Shown: one piece after another, positions 1 to 42,312 of the stretch
Numbering within the stretch: the first letter of the stretch is position 1
Layout: the number at the start of each line of letters is the position of its first letter
Virus record (IMG/VR): IMGVR_UViG_3300032245_001746
Location: 124,001 to 188,000 of that record
Length of the DNA: 64,000 nucleotides
Strand: one strand, 5' to 3'
Made by a program: the position numbers and the translations under genes
Notes under the pieces: generated by a model
What the model saw: only the letters and a program-made list of their open reading frames with translations
Databases searched by the model: none
What the model was told of the DNA's origin: nothing

Positions 1-2284
1 CAAGAGCAGTAGGTTTTCTTTGCAATGTCTTTTGACCAAACGCTATAAATCCTGTGTCTACGAATTGAATAATTGGATTGATAGCATTTCTGTTTCCATA
101 CATTGAATCTCTTTCTTCTAATGTAGGTCTGCTATAAACACCTGTTACTCCTGGCAATTGTCCTCTTGACATACCTGCTGGGGCAAACCAAGGTTCAGAT
201 AAAGCATCACTTCTTGCAATCATAGCCATTACAGATCCTGATGGTGGAACCCACACATCAATTCTGTTGAAATTATCACGAATCTTGACCCAGGGCCAAT
301 ACAATGCAGCAAAGTCACTATCAATCTTAGTCGAATTTAAAGGATGTGCTCCATTTTGCCATTTAATTATTTCATTTACGCCTAATCCAAATGGAGGATC
401 AATAATTGCCAAACAATCCATTCTATAGTTTTGACAAACATCAATTAATCCCAAAACAACACCTGTGCTAGAACGACCAGGAGCAGCAAGTAAGTCGATA
501 TCAATTTGTTCTGGATCGCTTAATGCGAACAAACCAGTTGAACCAACCACACTTCCGATAACTAAACTATCTTGAAGATCAGGATCAGATGGAATACCAT
601 CTGTTCCACCACTTAAAGAATAAGTTCCGTTTTTAGGTGGTGCAACTGCTAATGTATTATCAATTGCTGTTATGAAATCTGAATTTCTTATCAAATAAGT
701 TTCTACATAATATGTACTTGTTTGATCTTTAGTTAAATTACCATGACTTTCAACTTGAATACCATTGTTGTAGACTTCAATTTGAAAAGTTCCTTCTCTA
801 ACATCATTTTTTACTACAACTTGAGTTGTATTACCATCAATACCAGGACTATCAGCAGTAATTGTTAAACTATTGCTATCTGACACAGCAGAACCAGTTA
901 CAATTCCTAATTCTTGAATGTTTACATCACCAGTCACGCCTGAAGTTGTAGCTCCAGTAGATGTAGTTCCGTCAAAATCAAATATTTCAAATGCTGTAGA
1001 TTCTGATTTAACCAATATTTTAGCATCTTTTCCACTATGTAATGTGACTAAAGTTACATTATTTGCAGCATAAAGAGCGTGTGTTGTAAGGTTTACTGTT
1101 ACACCATTAATTACAGGTCCATTTGCAACTGATCCACCAACTGCGTAAAATCCGCCCATTATGGTTCCATCAGTGATTTGACTGTTAATTTCATTAACTA
1201 TGTCTGCAGTTGAGTTACTTAATCCTTCTAATGCTTCTAAATCAATTACTTGAACAGTATTATCAATTGCTGCATTTTCGCTACCATCTACTACAACTAA
1301 AAGTTGTAAATTTGAAGCACCAGTAAAATCCCAAGTTCCATCTACAGCATAACCAGTGCTGTATCCAGCAGCACCACTTGTTGTTTCTGCTTGAGTCATT
1401 TCTGTTCCTAAACTTATCATTCCAGAAAGTTTAGAATCTTTTTTAACTACGTGTGAATTACTCCAAGTTCTAGCTGCACCTAAAGTAATCGTATTTGTTG
1501 TGTAATTTACTGAAGTAATACTTGATGAAACGTTGTTTACAGTGATAGAATCGCCAGCGTAAAACATTGAAGCATCTGTAACTATCAAAGTTGTAGAGCT
1601 TGATCCTGAACCAACTGCAGTTGTACTAACTGTACCAGGAACTGCTTTTCCATATAATGAATTTTGAACACTGACTAATTCCAAAGAACTATCTGGTCCA
1701 TAAGAAAAAGTTGTTGAAACTTTTAATTTATTATCAGTTGAGCATGAAAATTCAATTCCGTCTACAGAAGATGATAATTGATCATTTAATTCTTCTACAA
1801 GTTCTGAACAAGTATATTTTCCAGCAGGAACTAACAATGTTTTAACAGATTCAATTCCGTTAAGTTTCCATTTAAAAAATGCATCAACATCAAAAACATA
1901 ACTTCCAGCAACGTTTGATTGTAAAACAATCGAAGCTCCAGCAACTGGAACATTCACAGATGCTGTTTTTGCAGCTTCATCATTTACAGAATTTGTTTCT
2001 GCAACTCTAACAATATAGAGTTCATTAGCAACAAGAAGATATTGTTCTGCAGCATATATCATGTATGGATCACCATTATCTGGGTGACCATAACCAAATA
2101 TTGTATGTAATTGTCTTGAAGATGCGATTGCAGTAGCTTTATTGATAGGTCCTTTGCTTGCAAATCCAACAAGTCCAGCACGATGAAAACTTTGTTGTGG
2201 ATTAACAAAACTTTCATCTTTTTCAATTATTCTAACTTGTGGTGATAATGTATTTGAAGGTGGAAAACCTTTTAGTATAGCCAT
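1..2284 (-). CDS. Contractile tail sheath protein (runs off window start; absent from ORF track)
   Basis: Manual translation from ATG at 2284: MAILKGFPPSNTLSPQVRIIEKDES...VGFASKGPINKA...FG...; downstream AALYWPWVKIRD..VWVPPSG..PWFAPAGMSRG..INPIIQF sheath motifs; GGGAGA RBS. Confidence 0.93.
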   Translation of the reverse strand, partial: MAILKGFPPSNTLSPQVRIIEKDESFVNPQQSFHRAGLVGFASKGPINKATAIASSRQLHTIFGYGHPDNGDPYMIYAAEQYLLVANELYIVRVAETNSVNDEAAKTASVNVPVAGASIVLQSNVAGSYVFDVDAFFKWKLNGIESVKTLLVPAGKYTCSELVEELNDQLSSSVDGIEFSCSTDNKLKVSTTFSYGPDSSLELVSVQNSLYGKAVPGTVSTTAVGSGSSSTTLIVTDASMFYAGDSITVNNVSSSITSVNYTTNTITLGAARTWSNSHVVKKDSKLSGMISLGTEMTQAETTSGAAGYSTGYAVDGTWDFTGASNLQLLVVVDGSENAAIDNTVQVIDLEALEGLSNSTADIVNEINSQITDGTIMGGFYAVGGSVANGPVINGVTVNLTTHALYAANNVTLVTLHSGKDAKILVKSESTAFEIFDFDGTTSTGATTSGVTGDVNIQELGIVTGSAVSDSNSLTITADSPGIDGNTTQVVVKNDVREGTFQIEVYNNGIQVESHGNLTKDQTSTYYVETYLIRNSDFITAIDNTLAVAPPKNGTYSLSGGTDGIPSDPDLQDSLVIGSVVGSTGLFALSDPEQIDIDLLAAPGRSSTGVVLGLIDVCQNYRMDCLAIIDPPFGLGVNEIIKWQNGAHPLNSTKIDSDFAALYWPWVKIRDNFNRIDVWVPPSGSVMAMIARSDALSEPWFAPAGMSRGQLPGVTGVYSRPTLEERDSMYGNRNAINPIIQFVDTGFIAFGQKTLQRKPTAL

Positions 2285-2504: not shown

Positions 2505-3428
2505 TTATGTTTCTTGTCTATCGTAAGTTTGATTTATATCTAGTTCATTGGTACTGTTATGTATATCAGTTTTGATTTTCAAAACAGTTTTATTTCTTAT
2601 GATTGGTTGTGGTATATATGTTTTTGTTGTAAAATTAATTTGATATTTTACAACTCTTACTTCTTTATCACCAGGTTCATAATTAATATTGTTTGCAAAT
2701 GAATCTAAACTAACTGTTACTTCCCAAGGAACATTTTGTACTTTTATATATGCTTGAGGACTAAATTTTAAAATAATTTGTTCTAATATTTGGTTCATAT
2801 CTTCTACATACAAACTCCAAATATACATTGTATAAGATATATCTATTGGTATTCCGCGAGTAACTCCAAATATAGTGTCTTTATCTTTTAATTCACTTCT
2901 CATAGAATCTTTTACATAAAATTTTGCTTTATGATAAGTAAATCTTGACATATCAGGAGCCAAACCTGATGAATGTATTGCCATTAATGGTAATACAGGT
3001 CTATCTACAACCAAACTATTATCTTTTCTAACATTATTTGCTAATATATACGCAACTGCTTTTTCTTGATTTGCACCTATTATCGGAACAGGATGTGCTT
3101 TTCCATCTTCATCTAAAACTATTATGTCTTTAAATAAATCCTTCATGCCTTGATCACAACCTCTTAAAGCATTACTATAACGATTTATAACATTATTATT
3201 GACTGGTTTTGATATGTCGTTAATTATAGATCCAGATTGCATTGGATCTGTAGTTGCACTAATGCCTATTTTTTTCAATTTACCAAAATCTTTAAATAAT
3301 TTATTGTTGTCATTACCACAATGTAATGAAGCTTTTTCTTCATTTAAAGAATTTGTAACAAGATTTATTTCGCTACATTCTTTTGATGTATTACCATTAT
3401 GGTTGTTAATATTAAATATCTTAGGCAT
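2505..3428 (-). CDS. Tail terminator / sheath stabiliser (T4 gp15-like)
   Basis: VPII..QEK, LPLMAI, PIDISYTMYIW..EDMNQILEQIILKFSP pattern; position upstream of sheath. Confidence 0.8.
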   Translation of the reverse strand: MPKIFNINNHNGNTSKECSEINLVTNSLNEEKASLHCGNDNNKLFKDFGKLKKIGISATTDPMQSGSIINDISKPVNNNVINRYSNALRGCDQGMKDLFKDIIVLDEDGKAHPVPIIGANQEKAVAYILANNVRKDNSLVVDRPVLPLMAIHSSGLAPDMSRFTYHKAKFYVKDSMRSELKDKDTIFGVTRGIPIDISYTMYIWSLYVEDMNQILEQIILKFSPQAYIKVQNVPWEVTVSLDSFANNINYEPGDKEVRVVKYQINFTTKTYIPQPIIRNKTVLKIKTDIHNSTNELDINQTYDRQET

Positions 3429-3491: not shown

Positions 3492-3647
3492 ATGAAACAT
3501 TTTAAAATTAGAAAAAAAGAAGAAAGAAAAAAATATAAAATTATTGAAAATATACAAAGTCTTTCTAAGCCCAGAATACCTTTTTATTTTTTCAAAAAAG
3601 TAAGAAAAATACAAAGATATGTTGAGGAAAATTTTAATATTAATTAA
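3492..3647 (+). CDS. Small basic hypothetical protein
   Basis: ATG at 3492 gives a 51-aa Lys-rich ORF filling the intergenic gap. Confidence 0.4.
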   Translation: MKHFKIRKKEERKKYKIIENIQSLSKPRIPFYFFKKVRKIQRYVEENFNIN

Positions 3648-4177
3648 AAAGGTTTAATGACTGGAGGACTTTTTTCTGTAACTTTGCCACTACTTGTTGT
3701 AATAGATTCTTGAAATTGTTTGCATATTAATATGGTTCTCATGTTTCCCCATAATTTAAATTCAGCATAATTTCTTTGAACAATTTCCCAATTTTCACCC
3801 AAATGTGGTGTATGAATTCTAGATCCTATTTTTGGCATGTGTCCAATTCTTTTAATTAAGTCATTAGTGTTGCACTCAATTGCAATTTCATTCATAGAAT
3901 CAAGACCAAATTGATTTAAAAAATTTTGCGATGCAACTGGATCATATAATCCCCAAAATTCAACAGGAAAATTAGAAAATATTTTTCCTCTAGCTTCATT
4001 ATAATCTGGATCTATTTCGCTATTAGCTATGAAAACTTCATAATAATAAATTGGACTACCAGATGACATTATAGTTTCTTGATCCCATAGATCAAACAAT
4101 TTTAATTGATTGTTTTTAGGATCAAATTGTCTTATACCCCCGCCAGCTTTGTATTCAGTTCCATCTGAATTTTTCAT
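3644..4177 (-). CDS. Neck / head-closure protein (T4 gp14-like)
   Basis: G.PIYYY, DPDYNE, QFGLDS.NE, PKIG.RI, WEIV pattern typical of gp14-like proteins; gene context. Confidence 0.65.
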   Translation of the reverse strand: MKNSDGTEYKAGGGIRQFDPKNNQLKLFDLWDQETIMSSGSPIYYYEVFIANSEIDPDYNEARGKIFSNFPVEFWGLYDPVASQNFLNQFGLDSMNEIAIECNTNDLIKRIGHMPKIGSRIHTPHLGENWEIVQRNYAEFKLWGNMRTILICKQFQESITTSSGKVTEKSPPVIKPF

Positions 4178-4698
4178 TTTTTAGGTCCTCGTTTTAGAGA
4201 AACTCCTTTTAATTTAGCAGAATGTCTGTCCGGTTCGTCTTTTAGAGAGAACATTAATTTTCTTGCTTCTGCTGTAATTTCTGCTGCCGAGTCACCAGAA
4301 CATTTTTTCTTATCTTGTAAAGATATTGTTTTTACATCTTTATTATAATATCCTTTTCCAATTATAAATGATCCACCACTATAATCAGGATGAAAATAAA
4401 TGATTCCAACCCATGTTCCATCTATCCAATTGTTTTTTGATACAATTATTCTTACAGGATCTTGTTCGTACACATGTTTAATGTGATATCCATTTTGTTT
4501 TAATGCTGCACCAACATAACCTAAAGAAATTTTAGCATATGCTTTTAAAATTTCTTTTAATTTACTTCTAAAATTCACTTCAATACTATAACGACCAGTT
4601 GTTTGTTCATTTAATATGTTGTTGTTAACACACCATTCATTTAAGGATGTGCTTTCATTAATTTTATTGAACATTGACCAATCTTTGTATGATTTCAT
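4174..4698 (-). CDS. Hypothetical protein with capsid-targeting-like leader
   Basis: N-terminus MKSYKDW...INE. Confidence 0.7.
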   Translation of the reverse strand: MKSYKDWSMFNKINESTSLNEWCVNNNILNEQTTGRYSIEVNFRSKLKEILKAYAKISLGYVGAALKQNGYHIKHVYEQDPVRIIVSKNNWIDGTWVGIIYFHPDYSGGSFIIGKGYYNKDVKTISLQDKKKCSGDSAAEITAEARKLMFSLKDEPDRHSAKLKGVSLKRGPKK

Positions 4699-4711: not shown

Positions 4712-5236
4712 TTATCTTAATTCAATTTTTTTAGATTCACCAGCACTTGGAGAAAACACTAATTCTTTAATTTTTATTTTTTTACCAAAAAATTCTTTGT
4801 TGCCCACTAATTCTTGGCATTTTCCTTTTTTTACGTATGCTAGAGTACAATGAGGCTTATATCCATTATAAGTTGATGTATATTTTAAAGATTTTAATTT
4901 ATCATTTAATTTTCTTAATTTGTCGCTTTCAACTTCTATTTTTACAACATCATAATCATCATTTTCAAATTTACTTATTTTTCCTAATTTTATTTCAAAT
5001 TCTTTTTCGTCTTTAATTATTTCTTTAATTTCATCAAATTCTGTTGTGTGTAATCCGTATAATACAGTAACATGAGGTTCTGTTTCATATCCTGATTTAT
5101 TTTCTTTATAATATAAATCATCTTTAGAAATATTTTTTTTAGCCCAACTTAATATTTTATCATATTCTACTGTTGCCATTACACATGAATAAGTGTATGA
5201 TTCGTTTAAAACAACCCAATTTTTAAAATCTAACAT
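4712..5236 (-). CDS. 2H phosphoesterase, Acb1/T4 gp57B-like
   Basis: Two HxT motifs: EPHVTVLYG and YKPHCTLAY; leader MLDFKNW...LNE. Confidence 0.8.
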   Translation of the reverse strand: MLDFKNWVVLNESYTYSCVMATVEYDKILSWAKKNISKDDLYYKENKSGYETEPHVTVLYGLHTTEFDEIKEIIKDEKEFEIKLGKISKFENDDYDVVKIEVESDKLRKLNDKLKSLKYTSTYNGYKPHCTLAYVKKGKCQELVGNKEFFGKKIKIKELVFSPSAGESKKIELR

Positions 5237-5266: not shown

Positions 5267-5506
5267 ATGCAAAAATTATCTGAAGAAAATAAAAAAATTA
5301 TTTTTCAATCAATTGTTGAATTGAAAAAAGTTTTAAATCAAAATCATTCTAAAATAAATAAAAAATCAAGAGGTGGAGCACAAGTTGGTTGTATTTGTGG
5401 AAATTCACAAACTTGTGTACCTTGTAGTGGTTTAGCATTTATTAAATCTGCTATCGTTTATAACGATAAAGAAATGCTTGAATTTATTGGAAAAACTTGT
5501 TTATGA
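5267..5506 (+). CDS. Small Cys-rich hypothetical protein
   Basis: CICG..CVPC cluster. Confidence 0.55.
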   Translation: MQKLSEENKKIIFQSIVELKKVLNQNHSKINKKSRGGAQVGCICGNSQTCVPCSGLAFIKSAIVYNDKEMLEFIGKTCL

Positions 5507-7137
5507 TTGATTTAGAAAAATTAGAAAAACCATATGAAAAATATACAATTAGATCAATAATTCCATTAATTTGTGATTATTGTGGTTGTTCATTTAGTAG
5601 AGTTAAAAAATCTATTGAAAGATTAAATGTTAATTGTAAAAAAGATAGTTGTGGCTCTAAAGAATGCACAAAATTAAAGAAAAATGATGTAAATGTTAAT
5701 TTATTTGGATCTGAAAATTACTTCACATCAGAGGTTTTTAAAGAAAAACAAAAAGAAACAAATTTAGAAAAATTTGGCACTGAAGAATATTTTGATTCTA
5801 ATGATTTTAAAAACAAGAGAAAAGAAACTTTAATCGAAAGATATGGAGTTGATTCCCCTCTTAAAGATGAATCAATTAAAGAAAAACAGAAAAATACAGT
5901 TTTAAGTTTGTATGGAAAAACAAATTATGCTCAAACTGATGAATATAAAGAAAAATTAAAATTAGTTGATATTAATTATGATGAACTCATAAAGAAAAGA
6001 GATCAAACATCTTTAAATAAATATGGTGTTACAAGTTATTGTAAAACTGACGAACATAAAAAAAGAAAAAAAGAAACATGTTTAAAAAAATATAGATTTG
6101 ATCACAGTTCTAAATCAGAATTAAATAGACAATTAGCAAAAGATACGTGTGTTAAAAAATATGATGAAATTAGTTATTCTAAAACAAATGAATTTAAAGA
6201 AAGATACAAAAACACATGTATGGAACGATATGGAGTGCCAACAGTTTTAATGTTGGCAAAAAATAGAATTTATGGCAAAACAGAAAATGAATTAAAAAAT
6301 TTTATTAACTCATTTGGTTTTGATTTTAAAAAAGATTTTTCTGTATTAAATGGAAAAGAATTAGATTTATATGATGAAACTAAAAAAATAGCAATTGAAT
6401 ATTGTGGATTATATTGGCACAATGAATTTTCTTCTCTTAAAAAAGATAAAAATTATCATTATAATAAATACAAAACATGTAAAGATCAAGGAATTCACTT
6501 AATTACCATATTTTCTGATGAATGGGATTATAAAAAAACTCAATGTAAAAATTTCATAAAATCTATTCTTGGAGTTTATGAAACAAAAATTTTCGCAAGA
6601 AAATGTGAAATTAAAGAAATTGATAAAAAAAACTGTTGCAATTTTTGTGATCTATATCATATACAAGGATCTGTTAAAAAACATAAAGTTAGTTATGGAA
6701 TTTTTTATCAAAATGAATTATTAGGAGTAATTTCACTTGGACAACACCATAGAAACACACGTGCAAATAACATTGTTTTAAATCGACTTTGTTTTAAAGA
6801 TGGTTTTCAAATTGTTGGTGGAGCAAGTAAATTATTTAAACATTGTATTAATTGGGCAAAATTAAATGGTTATGAAAGCATAATCTCTTGGAGCGATAAT
6901 AGATGGTCGGTTGGAAGTGTTTATAAAGCTTTAAATTTTCAATTAGATGAAGAGTTAAAACCAGATTATAGCTATGTAAATTTAAGAAATTGTAAAAAAA
7001 GATTATCAAAACAATCTCAAAAAAAATCATCATCAAACTGTCCTAAAAATAAAACAGAATATCAATGGGCAATAGAAAGAGGATTAGCAAGGATATGGGA
7101 TTGCGGAAAAATAAGATGGAAATATACTATCCCATAG
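5503..7137 (+). mobile_element. Free-standing homing endonuclease (Hef-like PD-(D/E)xK with T.L.KYG repeats)
   Basis: Repeated TxLxKYG units; ELDLY..KKIAIEYCGLYWH, LITIFSDEW, IFARKC, RIWDCG; opposite strand within neck gene cluster. Confidence 0.8.
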
Positions 7138-8005
7138 TAATTATACCTGGGTCTCCAAATTTATAAATTAAATCTTCCATCCATTGTTTTCTTTCTTCTT
7201 TTGCTTCTTGAATTAATTGATCTCCATCAAGTTGTATTCCACCATTAGGTCCAGGTAAATTTTTAATTCTTCCTCGAATACGTCCCAAAATTTCTTTGGC
7301 ATAGGATAACGCGCCTTCTGTCATTGCTTGTGTTACATTTTCCCAGTCTTTACATTTTTGTATATAATGAATAGCAACTTTGTTCATATTATATGGAACT
7401 GGATATAATTTAATGTGTTTATATCCACCTATAAATTCCCATCCACCTAAATTAGATGAAACTCTACTATACATAGTTTCATACGTTTTATATAATGTCC
7501 ACTCTCCCATTCGACCCCAAATTGGTTGTATTGGATCAATTAATCCGCCTTGTATAGAAGCATAATTTCCACCTGGGTAAAAATATTCAATAGGAATTGT
7601 TCCACCTAAATCTGTTGCTTGAAATGCAAAAGTTCCCATATTTTTATATTCTACACTTCTTACATAACCAATATCATCTGGCATTTCATAAATACTTTGT
7701 CCAGGTTTTGTGGTAAATGTATAATAAGAATAAAAATCTCTTGGAGCATAATCTTCTACTATTTTTAAAGCTTGATTGATACAAAAATCAATATTTTGTT
7801 CATCTAATTCTAATTGAATATTAGGAGCACCTAACATATTCAAGATATAATCTCTTATTTCTTCTCTAACTTTTTCTCTTTTAGGTCTAGGACCAACATT
7901 TTTACAACCACCAGATGGTCCAGAACATGATGTTGAACACATCACTGAATTAACACCTTGTGAGGTTGGTCTTCCTAAAGCTATAGTATTATTTCCGCAT
8001 GACAT
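7127..8005 (-). CDS. Neck protein (T4 gp13-like)
   Basis: DYIL.MLGAP.I.LELDEQ.ID.CI..AL and LPGPNGGIQLDG..L..EA.EE motifs. Confidence 0.85.
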   Translation of the reverse strand: MSCGNNTIALGRPTSQGVNSVMCSTSCSGPSGGCKNVGPRPKREKVREEIRDYILNMLGAPNIQLELDEQNIDFCINQALKIVEDYAPRDFYSYYTFTTKPGQSIYEMPDDIGYVRSVEYKNMGTFAFQATDLGGTIPIEYFYPGGNYASIQGGLIDPIQPIWGRMGEWTLYKTYETMYSRVSSNLGGWEFIGGYKHIKLYPVPYNMNKVAIHYIQKCKDWENVTQAMTEGALSYAKEILGRIRGRIKNLPGPNGGIQLDGDQLIQEAKEERKQWMEDLIYKFGDPGIITMG

Positions 8006-10266: not shown

Positions 10267-11148
10267 TTAAAATGGTGGGTCATCTGGATCATTCTTAAAA
10301 GGCTTACTAATTTGTGGTTTAATTTTCTTTTTTCTTTTGTTTTTTAATAGTTGTCCACCTAGCAAATCCCATTTAATTTCTTTTGGATCTTCTTCATAAT
10401 CTTCATAACCATAATAATCCATTTCTGATTTTCGCAATCTATCTGCATCTGCGTATGGATTTGATCCTGCCCATAATGGATCTATTAAGACTAAAGATCC
10501 ATCTTTTCTTTGCATATAATTATTTTTGTTAAGATCAATATTTCCATTGAGTCCTGCTGTGGATATTATATAAAAAGCTTCAAATAATGGATATAATTTA
10601 GGATATTTTTCAAATAGTTCTATTTCTCTTTTATATACTTTTTCTTTTACTATTTCCCATTTATAATCTTTTCCTCTTCCTATTCTAGTTTGCTTTTCGA
10701 TTTCTTTATTTTCTTGACCATATTGTTTTGCTTCGAAATAAGAAATTGAATAGTCTATATTGTTAACAATTTGTTTCATTAATTCTTGATCATCAATTGG
10801 GTATAACAATTCAATTCTAGCAAGATAAATCATTGACGATGATTTCATTCTTTTGTAGAATGGCACAATTCTTTGTGGTGGACCATAAATTTTAGGAAAT
10901 GCAGGATGTGGATTTTTATATGCAAATCTAGCAAATCTTAAATAATATGGATCATCTTTAAAAGTTTTTACAACATAATTCCATTTTGGATGATAAAACA
11001 CTTCTCCACAACTTCCATTTCCAATATATTTTCCGCCTTCTGCATAGAATTCTTCCAATATTTCTTCTAATGATTTGTTTTTATTTAATGGATTTAAAAA
11101 CAAATCGGTTGGAGTGTCAAATGATTCATAAAAAAGTTTAAAATTCAT
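10267..11148 (-). CDS. Protein kinase-like protein with capsid-targeting-like leader
   Basis: IGNGSCGEVF Gly loop, YVVK lysine, DLNKNN catalytic loop, LIDP. Confidence 0.75.
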   Translation of the reverse strand: MNFKLFYESFDTPTDLFLNPLNKNKSLEEILEEFYAEGGKYIGNGSCGEVFYHPKWNYVVKTFKDDPYYLRFARFAYKNPHPAFPKIYGPPQRIVPFYKRMKSSSMIYLARIELLYPIDDQELMKQIVNNIDYSISYFEAKQYGQENKEIEKQTRIGRGKDYKWEIVKEKVYKREIELFEKYPKLYPLFEAFYIISTAGLNGNIDLNKNNYMQRKDGSLVLIDPLWAGSNPYADADRLRKSEMDYYGYEDYEEDPKEIKWDLLGGQLLKNKRKKKIKPQISKPFKNDPDDPPF

Positions 11149-11156
11149 GATATTTC

Positions 11157-11759
11157 CTAATAATAATGCACATTTGTGTTTTGATCTATATCATATGGAG
11201 TGTTCTTCAATATATTTATTGCCGTTCTAGTTTCAATTACTTTTGGGCTTATTAATGAAATAGGATTATCCCAATATACTTCTTCTACCGTTCCATGTTG
11301 TGGCATGTCAGTTGTTGTAAACATAATTGCAGAAATAGCTTCTGTCATATTTGCTTTTGTAAATCCTTTTGTTGTTAAATTTTTAAATTTTGGTTTTTCG
11401 AAATCTTTTGGATGAATTAGTTTATTAATATTTGATGCTTTATATATGCTAATGATATGATCAAATTGAACTTGAGGAACCCATTTTCCATACGTGCAAC
11501 TTATAGCAAAAACTCCTGCATTTCCGTAACCAAGTTTGTTTTCGTTAATAATTTTTTCAATATTTTCTTTTAAGGTAAAATGAATAAATTTATCTTTTTT
11601 TAATTCTAATTTGAAAAATTTTCTAGTATTATGTCTTTTCCAAAAATCTATTTGTTGAGAGTTATTTGGTTGTTTAGCCCAAATATTTTTACTAAATTCA
11701 CTTCCATGAAATTCTTCTTTGTCAAATTCTAAATTTTCAAACCACTTTTTAAAATTCAT
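11157..11759 (-). CDS. Putative ADP-ribosyltransferase-fold protein with leader
   Basis: FIHFT..NI.KI....L, GVFA, EEVYW spacing resembles H-class ARTs; leader MNFKKWFE. Confidence 0.4.
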   Translation of the reverse strand: MNFKKWFENLEFDKEEFHGSEFSKNIWAKQPNNSQQIDFWKRHNTRKFFKLELKKDKFIHFTLKENIEKIINENKLGYGNAGVFAISCTYGKWVPQVQFDHIISIYKASNINKLIHPKDFEKPKFKNLTTKGFTKANMTEAISAIMFTTTDMPQHGTVEEVYWDNPISLISPKVIETRTAINILKNTPYDIDQNTNVHYY

Positions 11760-12495
11760 TTGTTTTCCTTGTTATTTCAAAATTATTTCCATTCATTTTT
11801 AAATCCCAATCTTTATTGAAAAATCTATTAAATAATTTTTCATATACTGATGATCTTCTGTTTTTAATCATTTCAATTCCATGTTTGTAAGATGTAATTG
11901 CATTTCTTAATTCATTTGTGTTGAAATAAAATTCAAACGAATCTTTTTGAAGTTTATTAAAAATTGTTAAAATTTTGCCAAAATAAATGTTTATTTGATT
12001 TAAAAAATCTAAACAACTTGTGTCAGATTTTAAATTTGAAACTAATTCTTTGAAATAATTTATTATAATCAAATCTTGATTGTCAGTTTCATTTGTAATT
12101 TCTTCAAGTGATGAAAAAACTTTATTTTTTATTGGGTTTAAATTTATATTAGATATAATTTTTGAATCATTTTTATCTTCATAAGATTGAAAATATATTT
12201 TTTTAATATTGATCTCATCAGCTTTTTCTTTTATTAAATACAAAACTCCAGGTAATATTTCTGGATCTCTTCCAAGAATTTCGTTTCGTTCTGTTTTTTC
12301 ATATGATTCATTTACATAAAAAGACACTTCGTAAACTTGATCTTGTTTTTTAAAAAAAGTAACTTTAACTTCATTTTTTAATGAAGTTACAAAACTTAAT
12401 TCAATTATGTTATTACGAAATGATTTTTTTATAGAACCATTTGGCTTTCTTAATTCTACAATTTCATTTAATATCCATTTTTTAAATTCCAACAT
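11749..12495 (-). CDS. Hypothetical protein with leader
   Basis: MLEFKKWILNE start. Confidence 0.7.
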   Translation of the reverse strand: MLEFKKWILNEIVELRKPNGSIKKSFRNNIIELSFVTSLKNEVKVTFFKKQDQVYEVSFYVNESYEKTERNEILGRDPEILPGVLYLIKEKADEINIKKIYFQSYEDKNDSKIISNINLNPIKNKVFSSLEEITNETDNQDLIIINYFKELVSNLKSDTSCLDFLNQINIYFGKILTIFNKLQKDSFEFYFNTNELRNAITSYKHGIEMIKNRRSSVYEKLFNRFFNKDWDLKMNGNNFEITRKTNEF

Positions 12496-15510: not shown

Positions 15511-15870
15511 ATGAAAACATTTAAAGAATGGATGTTTAATGAAAATTTAAGTTTAATTCAAAGTTTTGCTCAACAAAATAATGTAGAATTAGATATTTAT
15601 GAATCATTTGATGACACAATAAAAATTTCAAGAATTTTTGTTCCTAAAGAATTGAGAAAACAAGGCTTGGGCACTAAAGTTCTCGAATTTGTTTGTAATT
15701 TTGCTGATTCTAATAATAAAATTATTTTATTGTCGCCATCAATTGATTTTGGTGCAACCTCGTTAAACAGATTATATTCTTTTTATTCAAAATTTGGATT
15801 TATTAAAAATAAAGGTAGAAAAAAGAATTATAAATACAGTGAAACTATGATTCGTTATCCAAATCGTTAA
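15511..15870 (+). CDS. GNAT acetyltransferase with leader
   Basis: VPKELRKQGLGT acetyl-CoA motif, FYSKFGF; leader MKTFKEWMFNE. Confidence 0.85.
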   Translation: MKTFKEWMFNENLSLIQSFAQQNNVELDIYESFDDTIKISRIFVPKELRKQGLGTKVLEFVCNFADSNNKIILLSPSIDFGATSLNRLYSFYSKFGFIKNKGRKKNYKYSETMIRYPNR

Positions 15871-23350: not shown

Positions 23351-23382
23351 TTGAAATTTAATTCATGTTGAAAGGAGTCAAT

Positions 23383-24324
23383 ATGTCAAAAAAAATAAAA
23401 TTTAAATTACCAAAAGTAATAAGAGAAGATATTTTACAATTGTCTTCAACTCAACAAATTGGTTGGAGTATTTCAGCATTTGGGGTCCCAGATGTTTGGA
23501 AACACACACAAGGAGAAGGTGTTAAAATTGCAATTTTAGATTCTGGATGTGATTTAGACCATCCAGATTTGAAAGATAATTTGCTTACTGGTATAAATTT
23601 TATAAATTTAAACAAATCTCCTGAAGATGATAATGGTCATGGTTCTCATACAACTGGCATTATTGTTGCATCTAATAATGAAATTGGCATGATTGGTGTT
23701 GCACCTAGAGCTAAAGTTATTCCAGTAAAAGTTTTAGATTCTAAAGGTTCTGGAGATTTAGAACATGTAGTTAAAGGAATTCGTTGGGCTGTAGACAACG
23801 GAGTAGATATCATTTCAATGTCTTTAGGCTGTCCATTTCCTATACAAAATGTAAGAAAAGCCATTCAATATGCAGATAAAAATGGAATTCCTGTTTTTTG
23901 TGCTGCAGGAAATGCTGGTAAAACAAAAGAACTTTTTTATCCATCAAATTATCCAGAAACTATAGCTGTTGGTTCTATTGATGAAACTTTAAGTAGATCA
24001 TCATTTTCCAACACTGGTGAGAATTTAGATTTCATGGCACCAGGTGGAAAAATATTTTCAACAATACCTGATAATTGGTATGGATATATGTCTGGAACAA
24101 GCATGGCATGTCCTTTTGTCGTCGGTCTGTCTGCACTTTGTTTATCATATCAAAGAATTAAATATCCTGATAAAAAATTATCAGGATCAAAAGATTTTAT
24201 TAACTTATTGAAAAAACATGTTGTTAACACAATAGATGTTGATGCAAACAACAAACAATTTTATCAAGGTTATGGAATAATTGATGTGAAAGCTTTAAAA
24301 GAAGAATTTTTAAAAAATAATTGA
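23383..24324 (+). CDS. Subtilisin-like serine protease (S8)
   Basis: Catalytic triad ILDSG, GHGSH, SGTSMA.P; AAGN oxyanion motif; AAGGAG RBS supports the 23383 start. Confidence 0.95.
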   Translation: MSKKIKFKLPKVIREDILQLSSTQQIGWSISAFGVPDVWKHTQGEGVKIAILDSGCDLDHPDLKDNLLTGINFINLNKSPEDDNGHGSHTTGIIVASNNEIGMIGVAPRAKVIPVKVLDSKGSGDLEHVVKGIRWAVDNGVDIISMSLGCPFPIQNVRKAIQYADKNGIPVFCAAGNAGKTKELFYPSNYPETIAVGSIDETLSRSSFSNTGENLDFMAPGGKIFSTIPDNWYGYMSGTSMACPFVVGLSALCLSYQRIKYPDKKLSGSKDFINLLKKHVVNTIDVDANNKQFYQGYGIIDVKALKEEFLKNN

Positions 24325-25860: not shown

Positions 25861-26622
25861 ATGTTATTTGAAGATAAAAAAATAATTTGGATAGAAGATA
25901 AACAAAAATTAAGACAAGCTTTTACAACTGGTGTCGAATATGCTTTTGTAAATTCTAAAAATTACCAAGCATGTCCTTTTGTATTTTGTAAAGATTTTCT
26001 GCAAGACGCACTCCATGCCAGAATTGTAAATGAAAAACGAGGAATACATGGTTTTTATTATGATCCATCTCAAAATAAAACTATAAATCTAAACAAAACA
26101 TTAATTTTAGTTACAAATTCTGAAGATGTATTGCTAGAGCAACGAATGGAAAGTTGTTTAGATTTTATACATCAATTAGAAGATAAATTTTCATTTAATA
26201 CTAAAACTAAAATATTAAAATGTCTGTCTCCTCCATTGAAATATATTAGATCTGGGGTTTTTTGTTTTGAAGCATCTAAAAGATGGATAATTGCTCCACC
26301 AATGATTTCTATGTATACGCTATTAATTAGAGTTGGTTTAGGTCATATAATTGGGCAAAAATTCAATAAAACTCTTGAAAAAATAGAATTGAAAGAGCAA
26401 AAGCCATATCAACATGTTGATGGACACAGAATACAACATGCCATAAAATCTATAAATTATATTATTTCTAAAGGAGATAAAAAAATATTTGGGAGTAAAA
26501 TTAAAGATAATTATCCAAAACATATTAAAACTTCTGTAATGCACAATGATCTTGGAATTATTGGATTTAGTAGAAAATTAACAAAAAATAAAATGCCTCA
26601 ATGGTTTAAGGAAAAAATATGA
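25861..26622 (+). CDS. Hypothetical protein coupled to COOH-NH2 ligase
   Basis: Overlapping ATGA junction with the ligase; GAGG RBS. Confidence 0.7.
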   Translation: MLFEDKKIIWIEDKQKLRQAFTTGVEYAFVNSKNYQACPFVFCKDFLQDALHARIVNEKRGIHGFYYDPSQNKTINLNKTLILVTNSEDVLLEQRMESCLDFIHQLEDKFSFNTKTKILKCLSPPLKYIRSGVFCFEASKRWIIAPPMISMYTLLIRVGLGHIIGQKFNKTLEKIELKEQKPYQHVDGHRIQHAIKSINYIISKGDKKIFGSKIKDNYPKHIKTSVMHNDLGIIGFSRKLTKNKMPQWFKEKI

Positions 26623-27545
26623 CAAAAATAGGCACAGATCCAGAATTTATGTTAGAAAAAGATGGAAAGATTTATTCTGCCATTCCGATTTTAAATAAAA
26701 AGAAAAAAATAAATTATTCTTCTTTTTATCATGATAATGTTTTGGCAGAGTGTACAGTCAAGCCTTCTTCTAATAAAGAAGAATTTTTAAATAATATTAA
26801 AGAATCTTTATGTAACTTTTCAAAACTAGTTCATCCTTATAAGTTAATTTCAAAATCTGCTCATTATTATGATAAATCAGAATTATCTTCAGAAAAATCG
26901 TTTGAAATATCATGCGATGCAGAAAAATGCGTTTATGACTTAAAAGTCATACATCAAGATGAACAGATTTTAAGATCTACTAATTTAAGAACAGCCGGTG
27001 GACACATTCATATTGGAGACAATATCTTAAAAGATAAATATAAATCTTTATCTTGTGTTAAAATGATGGATTTATTTGTTGGATTTACTTCAATTTATTT
27101 AGATAAAAATAAAGATGCTGTAGTCAGAAAAAAACTATTTGGCAAAGCTGGTAGATTCAGAGATAAAAATTATGGTATAGAATATAGAAGTATAAGTAAT
27201 TTTTGGCTTAACAATCCATATTATGCTGCATTTATATTTGATTTAAGTTGTTTTGTAGTTGATTTTATTAAAAGCAACAAAGATGAAGAATTGTGGAGTG
27301 TGAATATTTCAAAAATTGAAAATCCTAATAGTTGGCGTGATTTGTCTTTTAATGAAAAAGATTGTTATCAATGTAAAGGGTATGATCTACCATTATTGAT
27401 TGAATGTATTAATAATCATAAAAAGTGTAAAAAAATATTTAATTTTATTAAAAATATATTGCCTGCTAATCTGTTTGATAGATATCAAAATTTAATAAAC
27501 AACAAATTTTCTGATGATTTAATGTATAATTGGAATATTTATTAA
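26619..27545 (+). CDS. phiEco32-like COOH-NH2 ligase (glutamine synthetase fold)
   Basis: IGTDPEF, DNVLAE, LRTAGGHIHIG, GKAGRFR.K.YGIEYRS.SNFW. Confidence 0.85.
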   Translation: MTKIGTDPEFMLEKDGKIYSAIPILNKKKKINYSSFYHDNVLAECTVKPSSNKEEFLNNIKESLCNFSKLVHPYKLISKSAHYYDKSELSSEKSFEISCDAEKCVYDLKVIHQDEQILRSTNLRTAGGHIHIGDNILKDKYKSLSCVKMMDLFVGFTSIYLDKNKDAVVRKKLFGKAGRFRDKNYGIEYRSISNFWLNNPYYAAFIFDLSCFVVDFIKSNKDEELWSVNISKIENPNSWRDLSFNEKDCYQCKGYDLPLLIECINNHKKCKKIFNFIKNILPANLFDRYQNLINNKFSDDLMYNWNIY

Positions 27546-28525: not shown

Positions 28526-29131
28526 TTATTTAATCACGTATCCAGTAATTGGATCGATTTTTGGAAGTTCTTCCAAGTTTTCATAATTGTAACTTTTTGG
28601 CAATTCCATCATTTTGCTTAAAGATTGTAAAAATTCAACATCTTCTTTTTTAACTTTTTTATCGTCACACTTTTCGTCTTTTTTGTCTTTTTCTTCTTTC
28701 TTTTCTTTTTTGTCTTTTTTATCGTCACACTTTTCGTCTTTTTTCATTTTCTTTTTCATGAAAAGTTTTTTATCACTTGATTCATCAGATTCATCTGAAT
28801 CTTCATCATCCATTTTATCTCTTAATTCATCATCTGACGATTCTTCGTCTTCTGGTGATTCTTCATTTCCTTTTTCATCATCTTTTTTAGGTAAATCTTT
28901 TTCAGATTTAGGTTTTACTGTTTCTCCGTCGCCTGTTGAATCTAATGGTTTTTCATCTTCTAATTCTTCACCACCATCTAATTCCATTTTCTTTTTCATT
29001 GCTTTCTTTTTTGCTTCTAAAATATCATAAAAAGCAGAAAGATTTGGATTAACAACGCTTTGGGCACTTTTTACACCTAATGATTGATCATAAGATTCAT
29101 TTATTTTTTGCCATTCTCTAAATGTTATCAT
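28526..29131 (-). CDS. Highly charged low-complexity protein with leader (possible head core protein)
   Basis: MITFREW..INE; D/E/K-rich; internal KKDEKCDDKK duplication with 60-bp period. Confidence 0.75.
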   Translation of the reverse strand: MITFREWQKINESYDQSLGVKSAQSVVNPNLSAFYDILEAKKKAMKKKMELDGGEELEDEKPLDSTGDGETVKPKSEKDLPKKDDEKGNEESPEDEESSDDELRDKMDDEDSDESDESSDKKLFMKKKMKKDEKCDDKKDKKEKKEEKDKKDEKCDDKKVKKEDVEFLQSLSKMMELPKSYNYENLEELPKIDPITGYVIK

Positions 29132-34629: not shown

Positions 34630-34663
34630 TTGAGGTTCTCAATCTTTTTTTTTGGACTTACCA

Positions 34664-35980
34664 ATGAGCAAATTAGTAGTTGAAGTTTGTCAAATTTCAA
34701 AAGTTTCTTCTCACCCTAATGCAGATAAACTTGATGTAATTCAAGTTAAAGGCTGGGATACAATTGTTTCAAAGGGTACGTTTAAAGAAGGTGATAAATG
34801 CATATTTTTCCCTCCAGATTCTGTACTTCAACCAGAACTTTATAATTCCCCAAATGATCCTATCACACCTGGAAGATTAAATAATTCAAATTATTTAAAA
34901 ACATTACCAACTGATTTTGAGGGAAATAAACCTAGTGGCAAAAGAGTTACTGCTTGTCGTCTAAGAGGCTCTGTGTCTTATGGATTGGCAATTCCTCTAG
35001 ATTTAAATTATGGCGATTTAGATTGGGATGTAGGCACTGATGTTTCTGAATTTTTTAAAGTAACTAAATACGAGCCACCAGTTGAATCTGTAATGGGCGA
35101 ATGTGAAAAGTTTAATTCAAGATTTTATCCATATAAAAGCATCGAACATTATGCTAATTTTACAGATCTATTTCAAGATGAAGAAGAAGTAATTTTTACC
35201 GAAAAGGTGCATGGAACCAATTCTAGAGTTGGATTAATTTTAGAACCAGACTCAACAGGAAATTCACAATGGACCTATGCCGCAGGTTCTCATTCTGTTA
35301 GAAGAAAAGAGTTTTCCAACATTGAAACCAGAGTTTTAGCTTCAAAACTTGAAGAAAAAAACATTAAAATTCTTAAAAAAGATGACGTTTCTTATTTTAA
35401 AGATGAAAATGGTATTTTTTGGATGATAAATCAAGAGATAATATCAGATATTGGTATGAAATATCAAGTCGTTCAAGTCAATTCAGATTTTGAATTGATT
35501 AAACGTAAATCTGATTATTGGTTACCATTAACAGAAAATATGAAAAATTTATTGAATTATTTAAAAGATAATTTTAAAACTGAAGAAACAATGCACTCTA
35601 TAATGATTTATGGAGAAATATACGGATTTGGAGTTCAAGATATGTGTTATGGTTTAAATCGTAAATCATACAAAGCTTTTGATATTGCTATTAATAATAT
35701 TTATCTTGATTATGATTATCAAATTGAATTATTTAATAAGTTTAACATTGAAGTTGTTCCTGTATTATATAGAGGACCATTTAGTCAAGAAAAAGTTAAA
35801 GAGTTTACTACTGGACCTACAACCATTTGTGATACAAAAAATGCTGGAAAATTTAAAGGAAGAGAAGGAATTGTGATTAAATCTGTTATTGAAAATAAAA
35901 TGTTTAACAAACCTAGAAAAATAGCAAAATCTGTTTCTGCTGATTATTTGTCAAGAGAAAATGGAACAGAGTTTCACTAA
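34664..35980 (+). CDS. RNA ligase (DRB0094/Rnl2-like with N-terminal OB domain)
   Basis: HPNADKL, RLRG..S.GL, TEKVHGTN (motif I), YGEIYG, AFDI, REGIVIK. Confidence 0.9.
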   Translation: MSKLVVEVCQISKVSSHPNADKLDVIQVKGWDTIVSKGTFKEGDKCIFFPPDSVLQPELYNSPNDPITPGRLNNSNYLKTLPTDFEGNKPSGKRVTACRLRGSVSYGLAIPLDLNYGDLDWDVGTDVSEFFKVTKYEPPVESVMGECEKFNSRFYPYKSIEHYANFTDLFQDEEEVIFTEKVHGTNSRVGLILEPDSTGNSQWTYAAGSHSVRRKEFSNIETRVLASKLEEKNIKILKKDDVSYFKDENGIFWMINQEIISDIGMKYQVVQVNSDFELIKRKSDYWLPLTENMKNLLNYLKDNFKTEETMHSIMIYGEIYGFGVQDMCYGLNRKSYKAFDIAINNIYLDYDYQIELFNKFNIEVVPVLYRGPFSQEKVKEFTTGPTTICDTKNAGKFKGREGIVIKSVIENKMFNKPRKIAKSVSADYLSRENGTEFH

Positions 35981-42068: not shown

Positions 42069-42312
42069 ATATGAAGACGAATCTTATTATCAAACTTATA
42101 TTGGATTGATAGAATATTTAAAACTTCATGATTATAAAAGAATCTATTTAGCTAACATGATGTCTCTCCACAAAGATGATATTAAAAAAATGAATTTGTT
42201 TATGTCATTTGATGAAATTCTTGTATCATCAAATGACCAAATAAATTTAACTATAGAAAAAATACAAAAAGCTTTTAATATTAATTTGAAAAAAGGAAAT
42301 GTTCAAATATGA
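42061..42312 (+). CDS. Small hypothetical protein
   Basis: Overlaps the nadE stop and the PP2C start. Confidence 0.6.
   Translation: MNEYEDESYYQTYIGLIEYLKLHDYKRIYLANMMSLHKDDIKKMNLFMSFDEILVSSNDQINLTIEKIQKAFNINLKKGNVQI

What the first reader, a model, noticed from the sequence alone, without database searches (positions are those of the whole stretch)
4712..5236. Acb1-like phosphoesterase carrying the packaging leader, inside the neck/tail operon
Seen: HVT and HCT 2H motifs in the Acb1/gp57B-like context PHVTVLYG...YKPHCTLAY, plus the leader. Known: Acb1 degrades CBASS cyclic oligonucleotides. Inference: a virion-delivered signal-degrading enzyme that could act before any phage gene is expressed.
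Basis: partly seen in the sequence, partly recalled or inferred. Interest (0 to 1): 0.6.

Follow-up and report, generated by a model that had tools for sequence, protein, structure and literature searches.

The report
Capsid-tagged Acb1-like phosphoesterase in huge phage
A huge T4-like phage encodes, among its neck genes, a small RNA/nucleotide-cutting enzyme related to the anti-CBASS enzyme Acb1 that carries the same kind of N-terminal tag T4 uses to load proteins into its head, so it is probably injected with the DNA, though neither the packaging nor the substrate has been shown.

Summary
The ORF at 4712-5236 (-) encodes a 174-aa 2H phosphoesterase with H55-V-T57 and H129-C-T131. Its fold is confident (pLDDT 90.8), and only the 12-residue N-terminal leader is disordered.

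By profile comparison its family is much closer to phage Acb1 (hhalign 97%, E 6.5e-11) than to ThpR/LigT (47%, E 2e-4). It passes Pfam's Acb1 cut-off and matches only PHROG 755, T4 Acb1's family. It is a separate subfamily, though. The generic 2H model scores higher, structure searches tie all 2H families, and Acb1's C-terminal Trp lid is missing.

The leader matches the T4 capsid targeting sequence, and a pattern derived from it finds all three T4 internal proteins. It heads about 37-44 of 452 ORFs in this 320-kb record (p 3e-25). It ends in a hydrophobic-x-Glu|Ser/Asn site identical to the predicted major-capsid cleavage site. A gp21-type prohead protease lies 3.5 kb beyond the window.

The gene sits between gp13 and gp14/gp15 in three diverged relatives. 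Some homologues add a copy of the capsid protein's N-arm.

Verdict: a probably head-packaged, Acb1-like enzyme. Packaging and substrate are inferred. It is a new variant of known kinds.

The parts
4712..5236 (-). Gene for the 174-aa 2H phosphoesterase (P0001), Acb1-like subfamily
   Evidence: ORF and translation. Pfam PF13563 45.6 bits and PF23474 34.7 bits. PHROG 755 E 1.2e-12. AF2 model pLDDT 90.8. 2H fold matches at Z 12-15.
5201..5236 (-). Codons 1-12: N-terminal leader MLDFKNWVVLNE, T4 CTS-like, ending in a predicted prohead-protease site (LNE|S)
   Evidence: Residues 1-12 have pLDDT below 50 and the fold starts at about residue 14. The leader is conserved in at least 43 of 102 homologues. 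The same pattern finds T4 IPI, IPII and IPIII. P3 is hydrophobic in 36 of 37 leaders and P1' is S or N in 26 of 37.
5066..5074 (-). First catalytic HxT motif (H55-V-T57)
   Evidence: Read directly from the sequence. Invariant in alignment A1. Aligns with Acb1 H44/T46.
4844..4852 (-). Second catalytic HxT motif (H129-C-T131), followed by L-A-Y134
   Evidence: It aligns with Acb1 H113/T115/Y118. ThpR and PH0099 have Arg where Y134 stands.
4174..4698 (-). Downstream gene X (174 aa), also leader-bearing (MKSYKDW...INE|S), function unknown
   Evidence: It starts 13 nt after the 2H stop. It is 55-57% identical and in the same position in L003 and L005. No Pfam or PHROG hit. Its model has no clear PDB match.
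3644..4177 (-). gp14-like neck protein gene (lead only)
   Evidence: It overlaps X by 4 nt. Atlas feature hits at 0.94 fall in clusters carrying T4_neck-protein or head-tail joining families. It is conserved in L003 and L005.
2505..3428 (-). gp15-type tail sheath stabiliser gene
   Evidence: Pfam PF16724 E 2.3e-25 and PHROG 227.
2..2284 (-). Tail sheath gene (runs off the window start)
   Evidence: ORF. The orthologous position in L003/L004 carries Phage_sheath_1.
7127..8005 (-). gp13-type head-tail adaptor gene, upstream end of the neck module
   Evidence: PHROG 211 'head-tail adaptor Ad2' E 7e-15. Orthologues in L003 and L005 carry PF26809 Phage_T4_gp13.
5267..7137 (+). Opposite-strand insert between gp13 and the 2H gene: a small ORF plus a homing-endonuclease-like ORF (DUF7487 plus a Mom/GNAT-like domain)
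   Evidence: Pfam and PHROG 3339/559 hits. It is present at the same site in L005/L006 and absent in L003/L004.

Best explanation
The gene encodes an active, metal-independent 2H phosphoesterase of a subfamily allied to phage Acb1. It is made with the neck and tail proteins. I infer that its 12-residue N-terminal leader works like the T4 capsid targeting sequence. On that reading the leader takes the protein into the scaffolding core of the prohead, and the phage's gp21-type protease cuts it off after Glu12 (LNE|S). The roughly 162-residue enzyme then stays in the filled head and enters the cell with the DNA. Once inside, it would use its two HxT motifs to cut a phosphodiester or open a 2',3'-cyclic phosphate in a nucleotide substrate. 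The likeliest substrates are cyclic oligonucleotide defence signals, as for Acb1. RNA ends carrying 2',3'-cyclic phosphate are the main alternative. What is shown: the fold, the catalytic tetrad, the family affinity, the leader's non-random occurrence and its likeness to the T4 CTS, the protease gene, and the conserved position. What is inferred: packaging, cleavage, ejection and substrate.
For: - **Enzyme:** Both HxT motifs are invariant across 42 homologues. The 2H fold is confident (pLDDT 90.8; Z 12-15 to many 2H structures).
- **Acb1 affinity, family models:** PF23474 scores 34.7 bits against a cut-off of 27. The only PHROG hit for this protein and seven relatives is 755, which is T4 57B/Acb1's family (E 5e-68); E. 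coli ThpR hits no PHROG at all.
- **Acb1 affinity, profiles:** A profile of the family finds 'Anti-CBASS protein Acb1' 9q2g (E 1.4e-7) and 7t26 as its best PDB sequences. hhalign to the Acb1 family gives 97.1%, E 6.5e-11, against 46.6%, E 2e-4 for the ThpR family.
- **Acb1 affinity, residues:** F90, Y123, Y126 and Y134 align with Acb1 W74, F107, Y110 and Y118. ThpR and PH0099 have Arg at the Y134 position.
- **Leader frequency:** It is disordered in the model and heads 44 of 452 ORFs (p 3e-25). The anchor residue is Trp in 19 of 37 leaders, against 1.2% Trp in the proteome. P3 is hydrophobic in 36 of 37 and P1' is S or N in 26 of 37.
- **Likeness to the T4 CTS:** The same pattern picks all three T4 internal proteins. 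T4 IPI starts MKTFKEF and window ORF 15511 starts MKTFKEW.
- **Protease and capsid site:** A Peptidase_S77 (T4 gp21) gene scores 92 bits at G000:C1:191704-192171. The major capsid protein has LNE|S at residues 50-53.
- **Capsid N-arm copy:** Five homologues carry the leader plus a copy of the capsid N-arm (16 of 26 identical, E 1e-7), followed by a second hydrophobic-x-E site before the 2H domain.
- **Conserved position:** The order gp13 - 2H - X - gp14-like - gp15 - sheath is kept in relatives at 47-51% identity.
- **Precedent:** T4 internal proteins are diverse anti-defence proteins that share only the CTS (PMC3012670). 2H domains fused to MuF or portal proteins have been predicted to be injected (PMC5512222). 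BFVD shows 2H domains inside 'capsid morphogenesis' and 'structural' proteins.
Against: - No proteomic, cleavage or activity data exist for this protein or any close relative.
- The generic PF13563 model outscores the Acb1 model (45.6 against 34.7 bits), and the ThpR equivalog TIGR02258 also matches weakly (32 bits).
- Against single sequences, the family profile is about equally far from T4 Acb1 and E. coli ThpR. The ThpR alignment used for the profile comparison is also of low diversity.
- The Acb1 models align only to residues 51-140.
- The last 40 residues contain no Trp, so Acb1's lid residue W147 is absent, and E141 has no clear counterpart.
- Structure searches tie Usb1, LigT, the plant CPDase and Acb1.
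- The gene is a conserved core gene of the neck module, unlike the variable anti-defence islands in which Acb1 usually lies.
- CBASS is generally triggered late in infection, so pre-loading the enzyme is not obviously needed.
- The leader could serve some other purpose.
Confidence: 0.45

Rival explanations
1. It is an RNA end-healing enzyme of the ThpR/LigT kind, whether packaged or not. It would open the 2',3'-cyclic phosphates left by host anticodon nucleases or other metal-independent RNases, and work with the phage's RNA ligase and Thg1-like enzyme.
For: PF13563 is the best Pfam hit, and TIGR02258 (RNA 2',3'-cyclic phosphodiesterase) matches at E 8e-8. Top structural Z-scores go to Usb1, TT0787, PH0099 and LigT. 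The window encodes an RNA ligase (34652-35980) and a Thg1-like protein (36396-37400). A comparative study assigned jumbo-phage 2H proteins to 2',3'-cyclic phosphate processing and RNA repair (PMC7824862).
Against: TIGR02258 scores 32 bits against a cut-off of 65.7. The phosphate-binding Arg of the HxTLxR motif is replaced by the Acb1-type Tyr. hhalign to the ThpR family gives only 47%, against 97% to Acb1. The gene lies about 30 kb from the RNA ligase and sits among neck genes. A 2017 survey found that 2H domains of injected proteins never associate with RNA ligases (PMC5512222).
Confidence: 0.25
2. The leader is not a packaging signal. It could be a lineage-specific N-terminal tag for timing, turnover, localisation or translation initiation. 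The enzyme would then be an ordinary cytoplasmic late protein that merely happens to be encoded among neck genes.
For: There is no direct evidence of packaging. About 10% of ORFs carry the tag, which is many more than T4's handful. In T4 the pattern also hits proteins not known to be packaged, such as 57B, rI.-1 and mrh.1.
Against: The tag reproduces the T4 CTS almost residue for residue. It ends in a Glu site with a hydrophobic P3 and a small or polar P1', identical to the predicted capsid-protein site. A gp21-type protease is present. Relatives with 35% GC keep the tag at protein level. Some homologues add a capsid N-arm copy right after it.
Confidence: 0.25
3. It is an RNase of the Usb1 type or a 2'-5' oligoadenylate-type phosphodiesterase. 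It would be injected to attack host RNA or a 2'-5'-linked signal rather than 3'-5' cyclic oligonucleotides.
For: The best structural Z-score is to human Usb1 (14.7). Viral 2',5'-phosphodiesterases and the penguinpox cGAMP phosphodiesterase are also matched. These two roles were proposed for 2H domains of injected polyvalent proteins (PMC5512222).
Against: No sequence-level match to Usb1, AKAP7-type or viral 2',5'-PDE chains appears in the profile search of PDB sequences. PF10469 falls just below its cut-off. The Z-scores are tied within about 1.5 across families.
Confidence: 0.1

Closest known systems
Acb1 (T4 gene 57B; Erwinia phage FBB1, PDB 7T26/7T27; Burkholderia phage BCSR5, PDB 9Q2G/9Q2Y)
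   Same: Both are small stand-alone phage 2H phosphoesterases with an HxT/HxT tetrad. The HxTL[AS]Y second motif is shared, and aromatic residues stand at the W74 and F107 positions. They share a PHROG (755), and the Pfam Acb1 score is above its cut-off. hhalign gives 97%.
   Different: Identity is 20% or less, and only the core (residues 51-140) aligns. There is no C-terminal Trp lid and no clear E141 equivalent. The protein is longer and has a cleavable-looking leader. It sits in the conserved neck module rather than an anti-defence island. The generic 2H model scores higher, and activity is untested.
T4 internal proteins IPI, IPII, IPIII with the capsid targeting sequence (CTS)
   Same: The N-terminal tag follows the same pattern (T4 MKTFKEF and MKTYQEF; here M-x-x-F-K-x-W). 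It is followed within 8-15 residues by a Glu cleavage site, and a gp21-type protease is present. The cargo proteins are otherwise unrelated to one another (PMC3012670).
   Different: T4 has three or four such genes, whereas this record has about 37-44. The cargo here includes enzymes (2H, GNAT) and an ankyrin-repeat protein. Nothing has been shown experimentally.
2H domains of phage polyvalent proteins fused to MuF or portal domains (Iyer et al. 2017, PMC5512222)
   Same: These are 2H phosphoesterases predicted to travel in the virion and act at the start of infection, possibly on nucleotide signals. BFVD matches include 2H domains inside 'capsid morphogenesis' and 'structural' proteins.
   Different: Delivery there is by covalent fusion to a large head protein. 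Here the enzyme is a free small protein with a short removable tag.
ThpR/LigT (E. coli RNA 2',3'-cyclic phosphodiesterase) and archaeal PH0099-type 2'-5' ligase-like proteins
   Same: The fold and catalytic tetrad are shared. Size and C-terminal beta-strand are comparable, and the structural Z-scores are similar. Profile matches are weak.
   Different: The score is below the TIGR02258 cut-off. The motif Arg is replaced by Tyr. hhalign to the ThpR family gives 47%. ThpR does not hit PHROG 755.

Membership tests
2H phosphoesterase superfamily | Two HxT/S motifs on a two-lobed alpha+beta fold | tested here: met
   H55-V-T57 and H129-C-T131 are invariant in 42 sequences. The model has pLDDT 90.8. 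Z is 12-15 to many 2H structures.
Acb1 (Pfam PF23474 / PHROG 755) | Scores above the curated family cut-off | tested here: met
   PF23474 scores 34.7 bits against a cut-off of 27, but only profile positions 32-114 of 144 match, and PF13563 outscores it at 45.6 bits. PHROG 755 matches at E 1.2e-12. T4 Acb1 is in that PHROG and ThpR is not.
Acb1 | Base-stacking aromatic residues W74 and F107 (FBB1/T4 numbering) | tested here: met
   hhalign pairs F90 with W74 and Y123 with F107. F90 is invariant and position 123 is Y, F or H across the family. The W74 position is also aromatic in ThpR, so only F107 discriminates.
Acb1 | Y12 on the first strand | tested here: inconclusive
   No profile alignment reaches the N-terminus. 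Y16 in the conserved Y-x-Y-S-C-V-M strand is a candidate by eye only.
Acb1 | C-terminal lid (residues 145-152) with W147, and E141 contacting adenine N6 | tested here: not met
   The last 40 residues contain no Trp. The C-terminus is predicted as ordered beta-strands 153-172. The Acb1 family's invariant E141 and L143 have no aligned counterpart.
Acb1 | Hydrolysis of 3'3'-cGAMP, cUA, cAAA and cAAG 3' of adenosine | not testable with these tools
   This needs a biochemical assay. The activities were defined in PMC9117128.
T4-type capsid targeting sequence cargo | N-terminal tag of the M-K-T-[FY]-[KQ]-E-F type | tested here: met
   The tag here is MLDFKNW. The same pattern finds T4 IPI, IPII and IPIII among 255 T4 ORFs, and is enriched eightfold at N-termini in this genome.
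T4-type capsid targeting sequence cargo | Tag ends in a gp21-type site (hydrophobic-x-Glu|small residue), and a gp21-type protease is encoded | tested here: met
   The site is L10-N11-E12|S13. Across the leaders P3 is hydrophobic in 36 of 37 and P1' is S or N in 26 of 37. Peptidase_S77 scores 92 bits in the same genome. The capsid protein has the same LNE|S. Actual cleavage was not tested.
T4-type capsid targeting sequence cargo | Protein found, trimmed, inside mature heads and ejected | not testable with these tools
   This needs virion proteomics or reporter fusions. The complex prediction with the protease could not be run.
ThpR/LigT (TIGR02258 equivalog) | Score above the equivalog cut-off, and the HxTLxR motif with phosphate-binding Arg | tested here: not met
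   The score is 32.4 bits against a cut-off of 65.7. Tyr134 stands where R130 is invariant in ThpR.

The most novel reading that the evidence does not exclude
This lineage of huge T4-like phages has expanded the T4 capsid targeting sequence into a general address label carried by about 40 proteins, including enzymes. One of these cargoes is an Acb1-type nuclease that is pre-loaded in the head. Nucleotide-based defence signalling (CBASS or a related system) would then be blunted from the moment the DNA enters, before any phage transcription. The Acb1 family as a whole may have started as head cargo: T4 Acb1 begins MMEFKDF, lies next to ipI, and has distant relatives with leader-like N-termini.
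Probability: 0.25. Interest if true: 0.75.

Novelty: new variant of a known kind. Interest (0 to 1): 0.55.

Why it matters
Known phage enzymes that destroy defence signals (Acb1, Apyc1) are described as proteins made after infection. An Acb1-like enzyme that arrives with the DNA would close that time gap, and would be a new delivery mode for this class of counter-defence. The leader also gives a simple sequence rule for listing the probable injected proteins of an uncultivated huge phage. In this window that list includes a GNAT acetyltransferase, an ankyrin-repeat protein and many unknowns. The rule can be tested directly in T4, whose own targeting sequence is nearly the same. If the substrate proves to be RNA ends rather than cyclic oligonucleotides, the finding still marks a virion-borne RNA-processing enzyme.

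Tried and rejected
- **Fold searches:** Foldseek against PDB and the VIA second look confirm the 2H fold but cannot tell Acb1 from LigT, Usb1 or the plant CPDase, because Z-scores tie within about 1.5. I did not use them to assign a subfamily.
- **Single-sequence hhalign:** It gave near-equal scores for T4 Acb1 and ThpR. Only the family profiles separated them. The ThpR profile is of low diversity, because the search returned only enterobacterial sequences.
- **Protease-leader complex:** There is therefore no result either way.
- **Late-promoter check:** ATAAATA lies upstream of 11 of 37 leader genes against 33 of 415 others (Fisher p 3e-4). In a 28% GC genome, with many genes inside operons, this is weak evidence, and I do not rest timing on it.
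- **Neighbour X (4174-4698):** It has no family hit. Atlas scores were below 0.9. Its model (pLDDT 69.6) has no PDB match at E 0.001 or better. Its function stays unknown.
- **Second 2H copy:** A search of the 320-kb record found none.
- **Literature:** The held library contains no paper linking a capsid targeting sequence to huge phages, or Acb1 to virions. No paper on the BCSR5 structure was found.
- **T4 Acb1's CTS-like N-terminus:** I rejected this as evidence. The pattern gives 7 hits in T4 where about 3 are expected by chance, so that single match may be coincidence.
- The sequencing-run and read-laying tools were skipped because they cannot show protein packaging.

Full report
**The observation.** The ORF at 4712-5236 on the minus strand encodes 174 residues. 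The protein begins MLDFKNWVVLNE. The start codon is not in doubt, because only about four in-frame codons lie upstream of it.

**Genome setting.** The window is bases 124001-188000 of a 319,857-bp IMG/VR virus record. The record has 28% GC and CheckV rates it about 63% complete. Its nearest relatives in the phage collection are uncultivated huge phages of 480-640 kb.

**What the protein is.**
- Pfam gives PF13563 (2_5_RNA_ligase2) at 45.6 bits and PF23474 (Acb1) at 34.7 bits, against a cut-off of 27. AKAP7 and LigT models match more weakly.
- The word search found 101 homologues, almost all metagenomic, several on contigs of 200-546 kb.
- In an alignment of 42 homologues, H55, T57, G61, F90, D96, V97, K99, Y126, H129, T131 and Y134 are invariant.
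- The AlphaFold model built from that alignment has mean pLDDT 90.8. Residues 1-12 are below 50, and the first strand starts at residue 17.
- Foldseek and the VIA second look both return the 2H fold.

It is therefore a genuine, probably active 2H phosphoesterase.

**Acb1 or LigT: what does not decide it.** Structure does not settle it. Usb1 (Z 14.7), TT0787 (14.6), PH0099 (14.2), E. coli LigT (13.7) and FBB1 Acb1 (13.3, with 131 of 137 residues aligned) are effectively tied.

**Acb1 or LigT: what does decide it.** Sequence profiles separate the two.
- The only PHROG matched by this protein and seven relatives is phrog_755, at E 1e-11 to 1e-13. That is the family of T4 57B/Acb1 (E 5e-68). E. 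coli ThpR hits no PHROG at all.
- A profile of the family, searched against all PDB sequences, finds 'Anti-CBASS protein Acb1' of Burkholderia phage BCSR5 first (E 1.4e-7). FBB1 Acb1 (0.0015) and the archaeal PH0099 (0.0021) follow. E. coli LigT is not found.
- hhalign of the family against an Acb1 family alignment gives 97.1%, E 6.5e-11, over 107 columns.
- Against a ThpR family alignment it gives 46.6%, E 2e-4. Acb1 against ThpR gives 2%.
- The alignment pairs F90, Y123, Y126 and Y134 with Acb1 W74, F107, Y110 and Y118. ThpR and PH0099 have the family-typical Arg where Y134 stands.

**Limits on the Acb1 assignment.**
- The generic 2H model outscores the Acb1 model, and TIGR02258 (ThpR) also matches at 32 bits, below its 65.7 cut-off.
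- Against single sequences, T4 Acb1 and ThpR score alike.
- The ThpR alignment is of low diversity.
- The Acb1 models cover only residues 51-140.
- The paper that defined Acb1 lists Y12, W74, F107, W147, E141 and a C-terminal lid at 145-152 as substrate-binding features (PMC9117128). This protein has no Trp in its last 40 residues, and its C-terminus is predicted as ordered strands.

I therefore file it as a separate subfamily on the Acb1 side of the 2H superfamily, not as an Acb1 orthologue.

**The leader in this genome.**
- The pattern M-x(1-5)-[FY]-[KRSQ]-x-[WFY] opens 44 of 452 crude ORFs, against 1.2% of internal positions (p 3e-25).
- 37 of these also have a Glu within nine residues, and 16 of the 37 lie in the window.
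- In those 37, Glu falls at position 8-15.
- The residue two before the Glu is F, I, Y, L or W in 36 cases. The residue after it is Ser or Asn in 26.
- The anchor aromatic is Trp in 19, although Trp makes up 1.2% of the proteome.
- Relatives with 35% GC carry several such ORFs within 12-16 kb. The signal is therefore conserved at protein level, not as a DNA motif.

**Comparison with T4.** As a control I ran the same pattern on the T4 genome. It picks IPI, IPII and IPIII, the three classical carriers of the capsid targeting sequence, plus four other ORFs among 255. T4 IPI begins MKTFKEF, and window ORF 15511-15870, a GNAT acetyltransferase, begins MKTFKEW. According to the T4 head review, the internal proteins are diverse anti-defence proteins that share only this sequence, which is sufficient to load foreign proteins into the head (PMC3012670).

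**Protease and capsid links.** A T4 gp21-type prohead protease (Peptidase_S77, 92 bits) lies 3.5 kb past the window end, within a portal - protease - scaffold - major capsid module. The major capsid protein has LNE|S at residues 50-53, where T4 gp23 is matured. The 2H leader ends in the same LNE|S.

Five homologues from another lineage strengthen the link. They carry the leader, then a copy of the capsid protein's segment directly after that site (16 of 26 identical to this genome's capsid protein, E 1e-7). A basic linker and a second hydrophobic-x-Glu site follow, just before the 2H domain. This is an independent tie between the enzyme family and the head.

**Position.** On the minus strand the order is:
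- gp13-type adaptor (7127-8005);
- an opposite-strand homing-endonuclease-like insert (5267-7137);
- the 2H gene;
- leader-bearing gene X (4174-4698);
- a gp14-like gene (3644-4177);
- gp15 (2505-3428);
- a small ORF;
- the sheath gene.

The order gp13 - 2H - X - gp14-like - gp15 - sheath is kept in contigs whose 2H proteins are 51% and 47% identical, one of them 546 kb long. The gene is thus a conserved core member of the neck module in this lineage. It is single-copy in the 320 kb held.

**Mechanism proposed.** The enzyme is made with the structural proteins. The leader takes it into the prohead core, where the protease removes it after Glu12. The trimmed enzyme is ejected with the DNA. It then acts by the usual 2H acid-base chemistry.

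Family affinity makes cyclic oligonucleotide defence signals the first guess for substrate. 2',3'-cyclic phosphate RNA ends are the main rival. That rival is supported by the generic 2H matches and by the RNA ligase and Thg1-like genes elsewhere in the window. It is also the role suggested for jumbo-phage 2H proteins in PMC7824862.

Packaging, cleavage, ejection and substrate are all inferred. A complex prediction of protease with leader could not be run.

**Novelty.** Acb1 is known. The T4 targeting sequence is known. Iyer and colleagues had already predicted in 2017 that 2H domains fused to MuF or portal proteins are injected and may degrade nucleotide signals (PMC5512222). BFVD shows such 2H domains inside 'capsid morphogenesis' and 'structural' proteins.

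The new element is the combination: a free Acb1-like enzyme with a short removable T4-type tag, in a phage where about one ORF in ten carries that tag. The held literature does not link a capsid targeting sequence to huge phages, or Acb1 to virions. I rate it a new variant of known kinds, with interest 0.55.

Noticed in passing
window 4174-4698(-), 10267-11148(-), 11157-11759(-), 11749-12495(-), 15511-15870(+), 28526-29131(-), 47434-48309(+), 48318-48491(+), 50192-50548(-), 50584-51600(+), 51628-51984(+), 52018-54153(+), 56794-57804(-), 59528-60292(-), 62319-63101(+): Fifteen further ORFs in the window start with the same T4 CTS-like leader. They include a GNAT acetyltransferase (15511), an ankyrin-repeat protein (52018) and a very acidic/basic low-complexity protein (28526). 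Most have no family hit. Across the genome 37-44 of 452 ORFs carry the leader.
   Followed up: partly
L009:8001-8672 (P0029); also P0020, P0031, P0032, P0037: 2H homologues of another phage lineage carry the leader plus a 26-residue copy of the major capsid protein's post-cleavage N-arm (62% identical to this genome's capsid protein). A basic linker and a second hydrophobic-x-Glu site follow, before the enzyme domain. There the gene lies among nucleotide-metabolism genes, not neck genes.
   Followed up: partly
L002:3953-4411(-) (T4 57B/Acb1), L002:3592-3879(-) (T4 ipI), L013:18966-19130(-) (T4 61.1): T4 Acb1 begins MMEFKDF, resembles the IPI targeting sequence MKTFKEF, and lies next to ipI. 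The uncharacterised 54-aa T4 gp61.1 begins MKTFKEFIKE. Distant Acb1 relatives P0171 and P0172 also have leader-like N-termini. This could be chance, since the pattern gives 7 hits in T4 where about 3 are expected.
   Followed up: partly
window 5497-7137(+): A homing-endonuclease-like ORF (DUF7487 repeats plus a Mom/GNAT-like C-terminal domain) sits on the opposite strand between gp13 and the 2H gene. It is present at the same site in a 546-kb relative (L005/L006) and absent in L003/L004, so it looks like a mobile insertion.
   Followed up: partly
window 34652-35980(+), 36396-37400(+): An RNA ligase (PF09414 with a PHA02142 OB domain) and a Thg1-like tRNA-His guanylyltransferase lie close together, which suggests an RNA repair set. 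By eye, neighbouring ORFs look like Nudix, nicotinamidase-like, NAD synthetase and NMN adenylyltransferase genes. Those were not scanned, or scored only weakly.
   Followed up: partly
window 42309-43109(+), 43674-45392(+): A PP2C-type phosphatase and a eukaryotic-type Ser/Thr protein kinase are encoded close together.
   Followed up: no
window 50192-50548(-) and 50584-51600(+): Two divergent leader-bearing genes start 35 nt apart. The intergenic stretch and both start regions form a near-perfect inverted repeat, and both proteins begin M-I-V.
   Followed up: no
L008:7044-9554(-) (G000:C1:194543-197053): The portal-like ORF is 836 aa, long for a T4-type portal. By eye it contains an insert resembling an intein. 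This was not tested.
   Followed up: no
window 23365-24324(+), 26619-27545(+): A subtilisin-family protease (Peptidase_S8, E 2e-57) and a phiEco32-like COOH-NH2 ligase lie near the tail-fibre region.
   Followed up: no
window 59528-60292(-), 60303-61583(-), 62319-63101(+): Two paralogous leader-bearing proteins (starting MNFKEWLITE and MNFKEWLINE; one has a faint ABC1 kinase-like hit) flank a 426-aa ORF. By eye, that ORF's N-terminus looks like a twin-arginine export signal.
   Followed up: no
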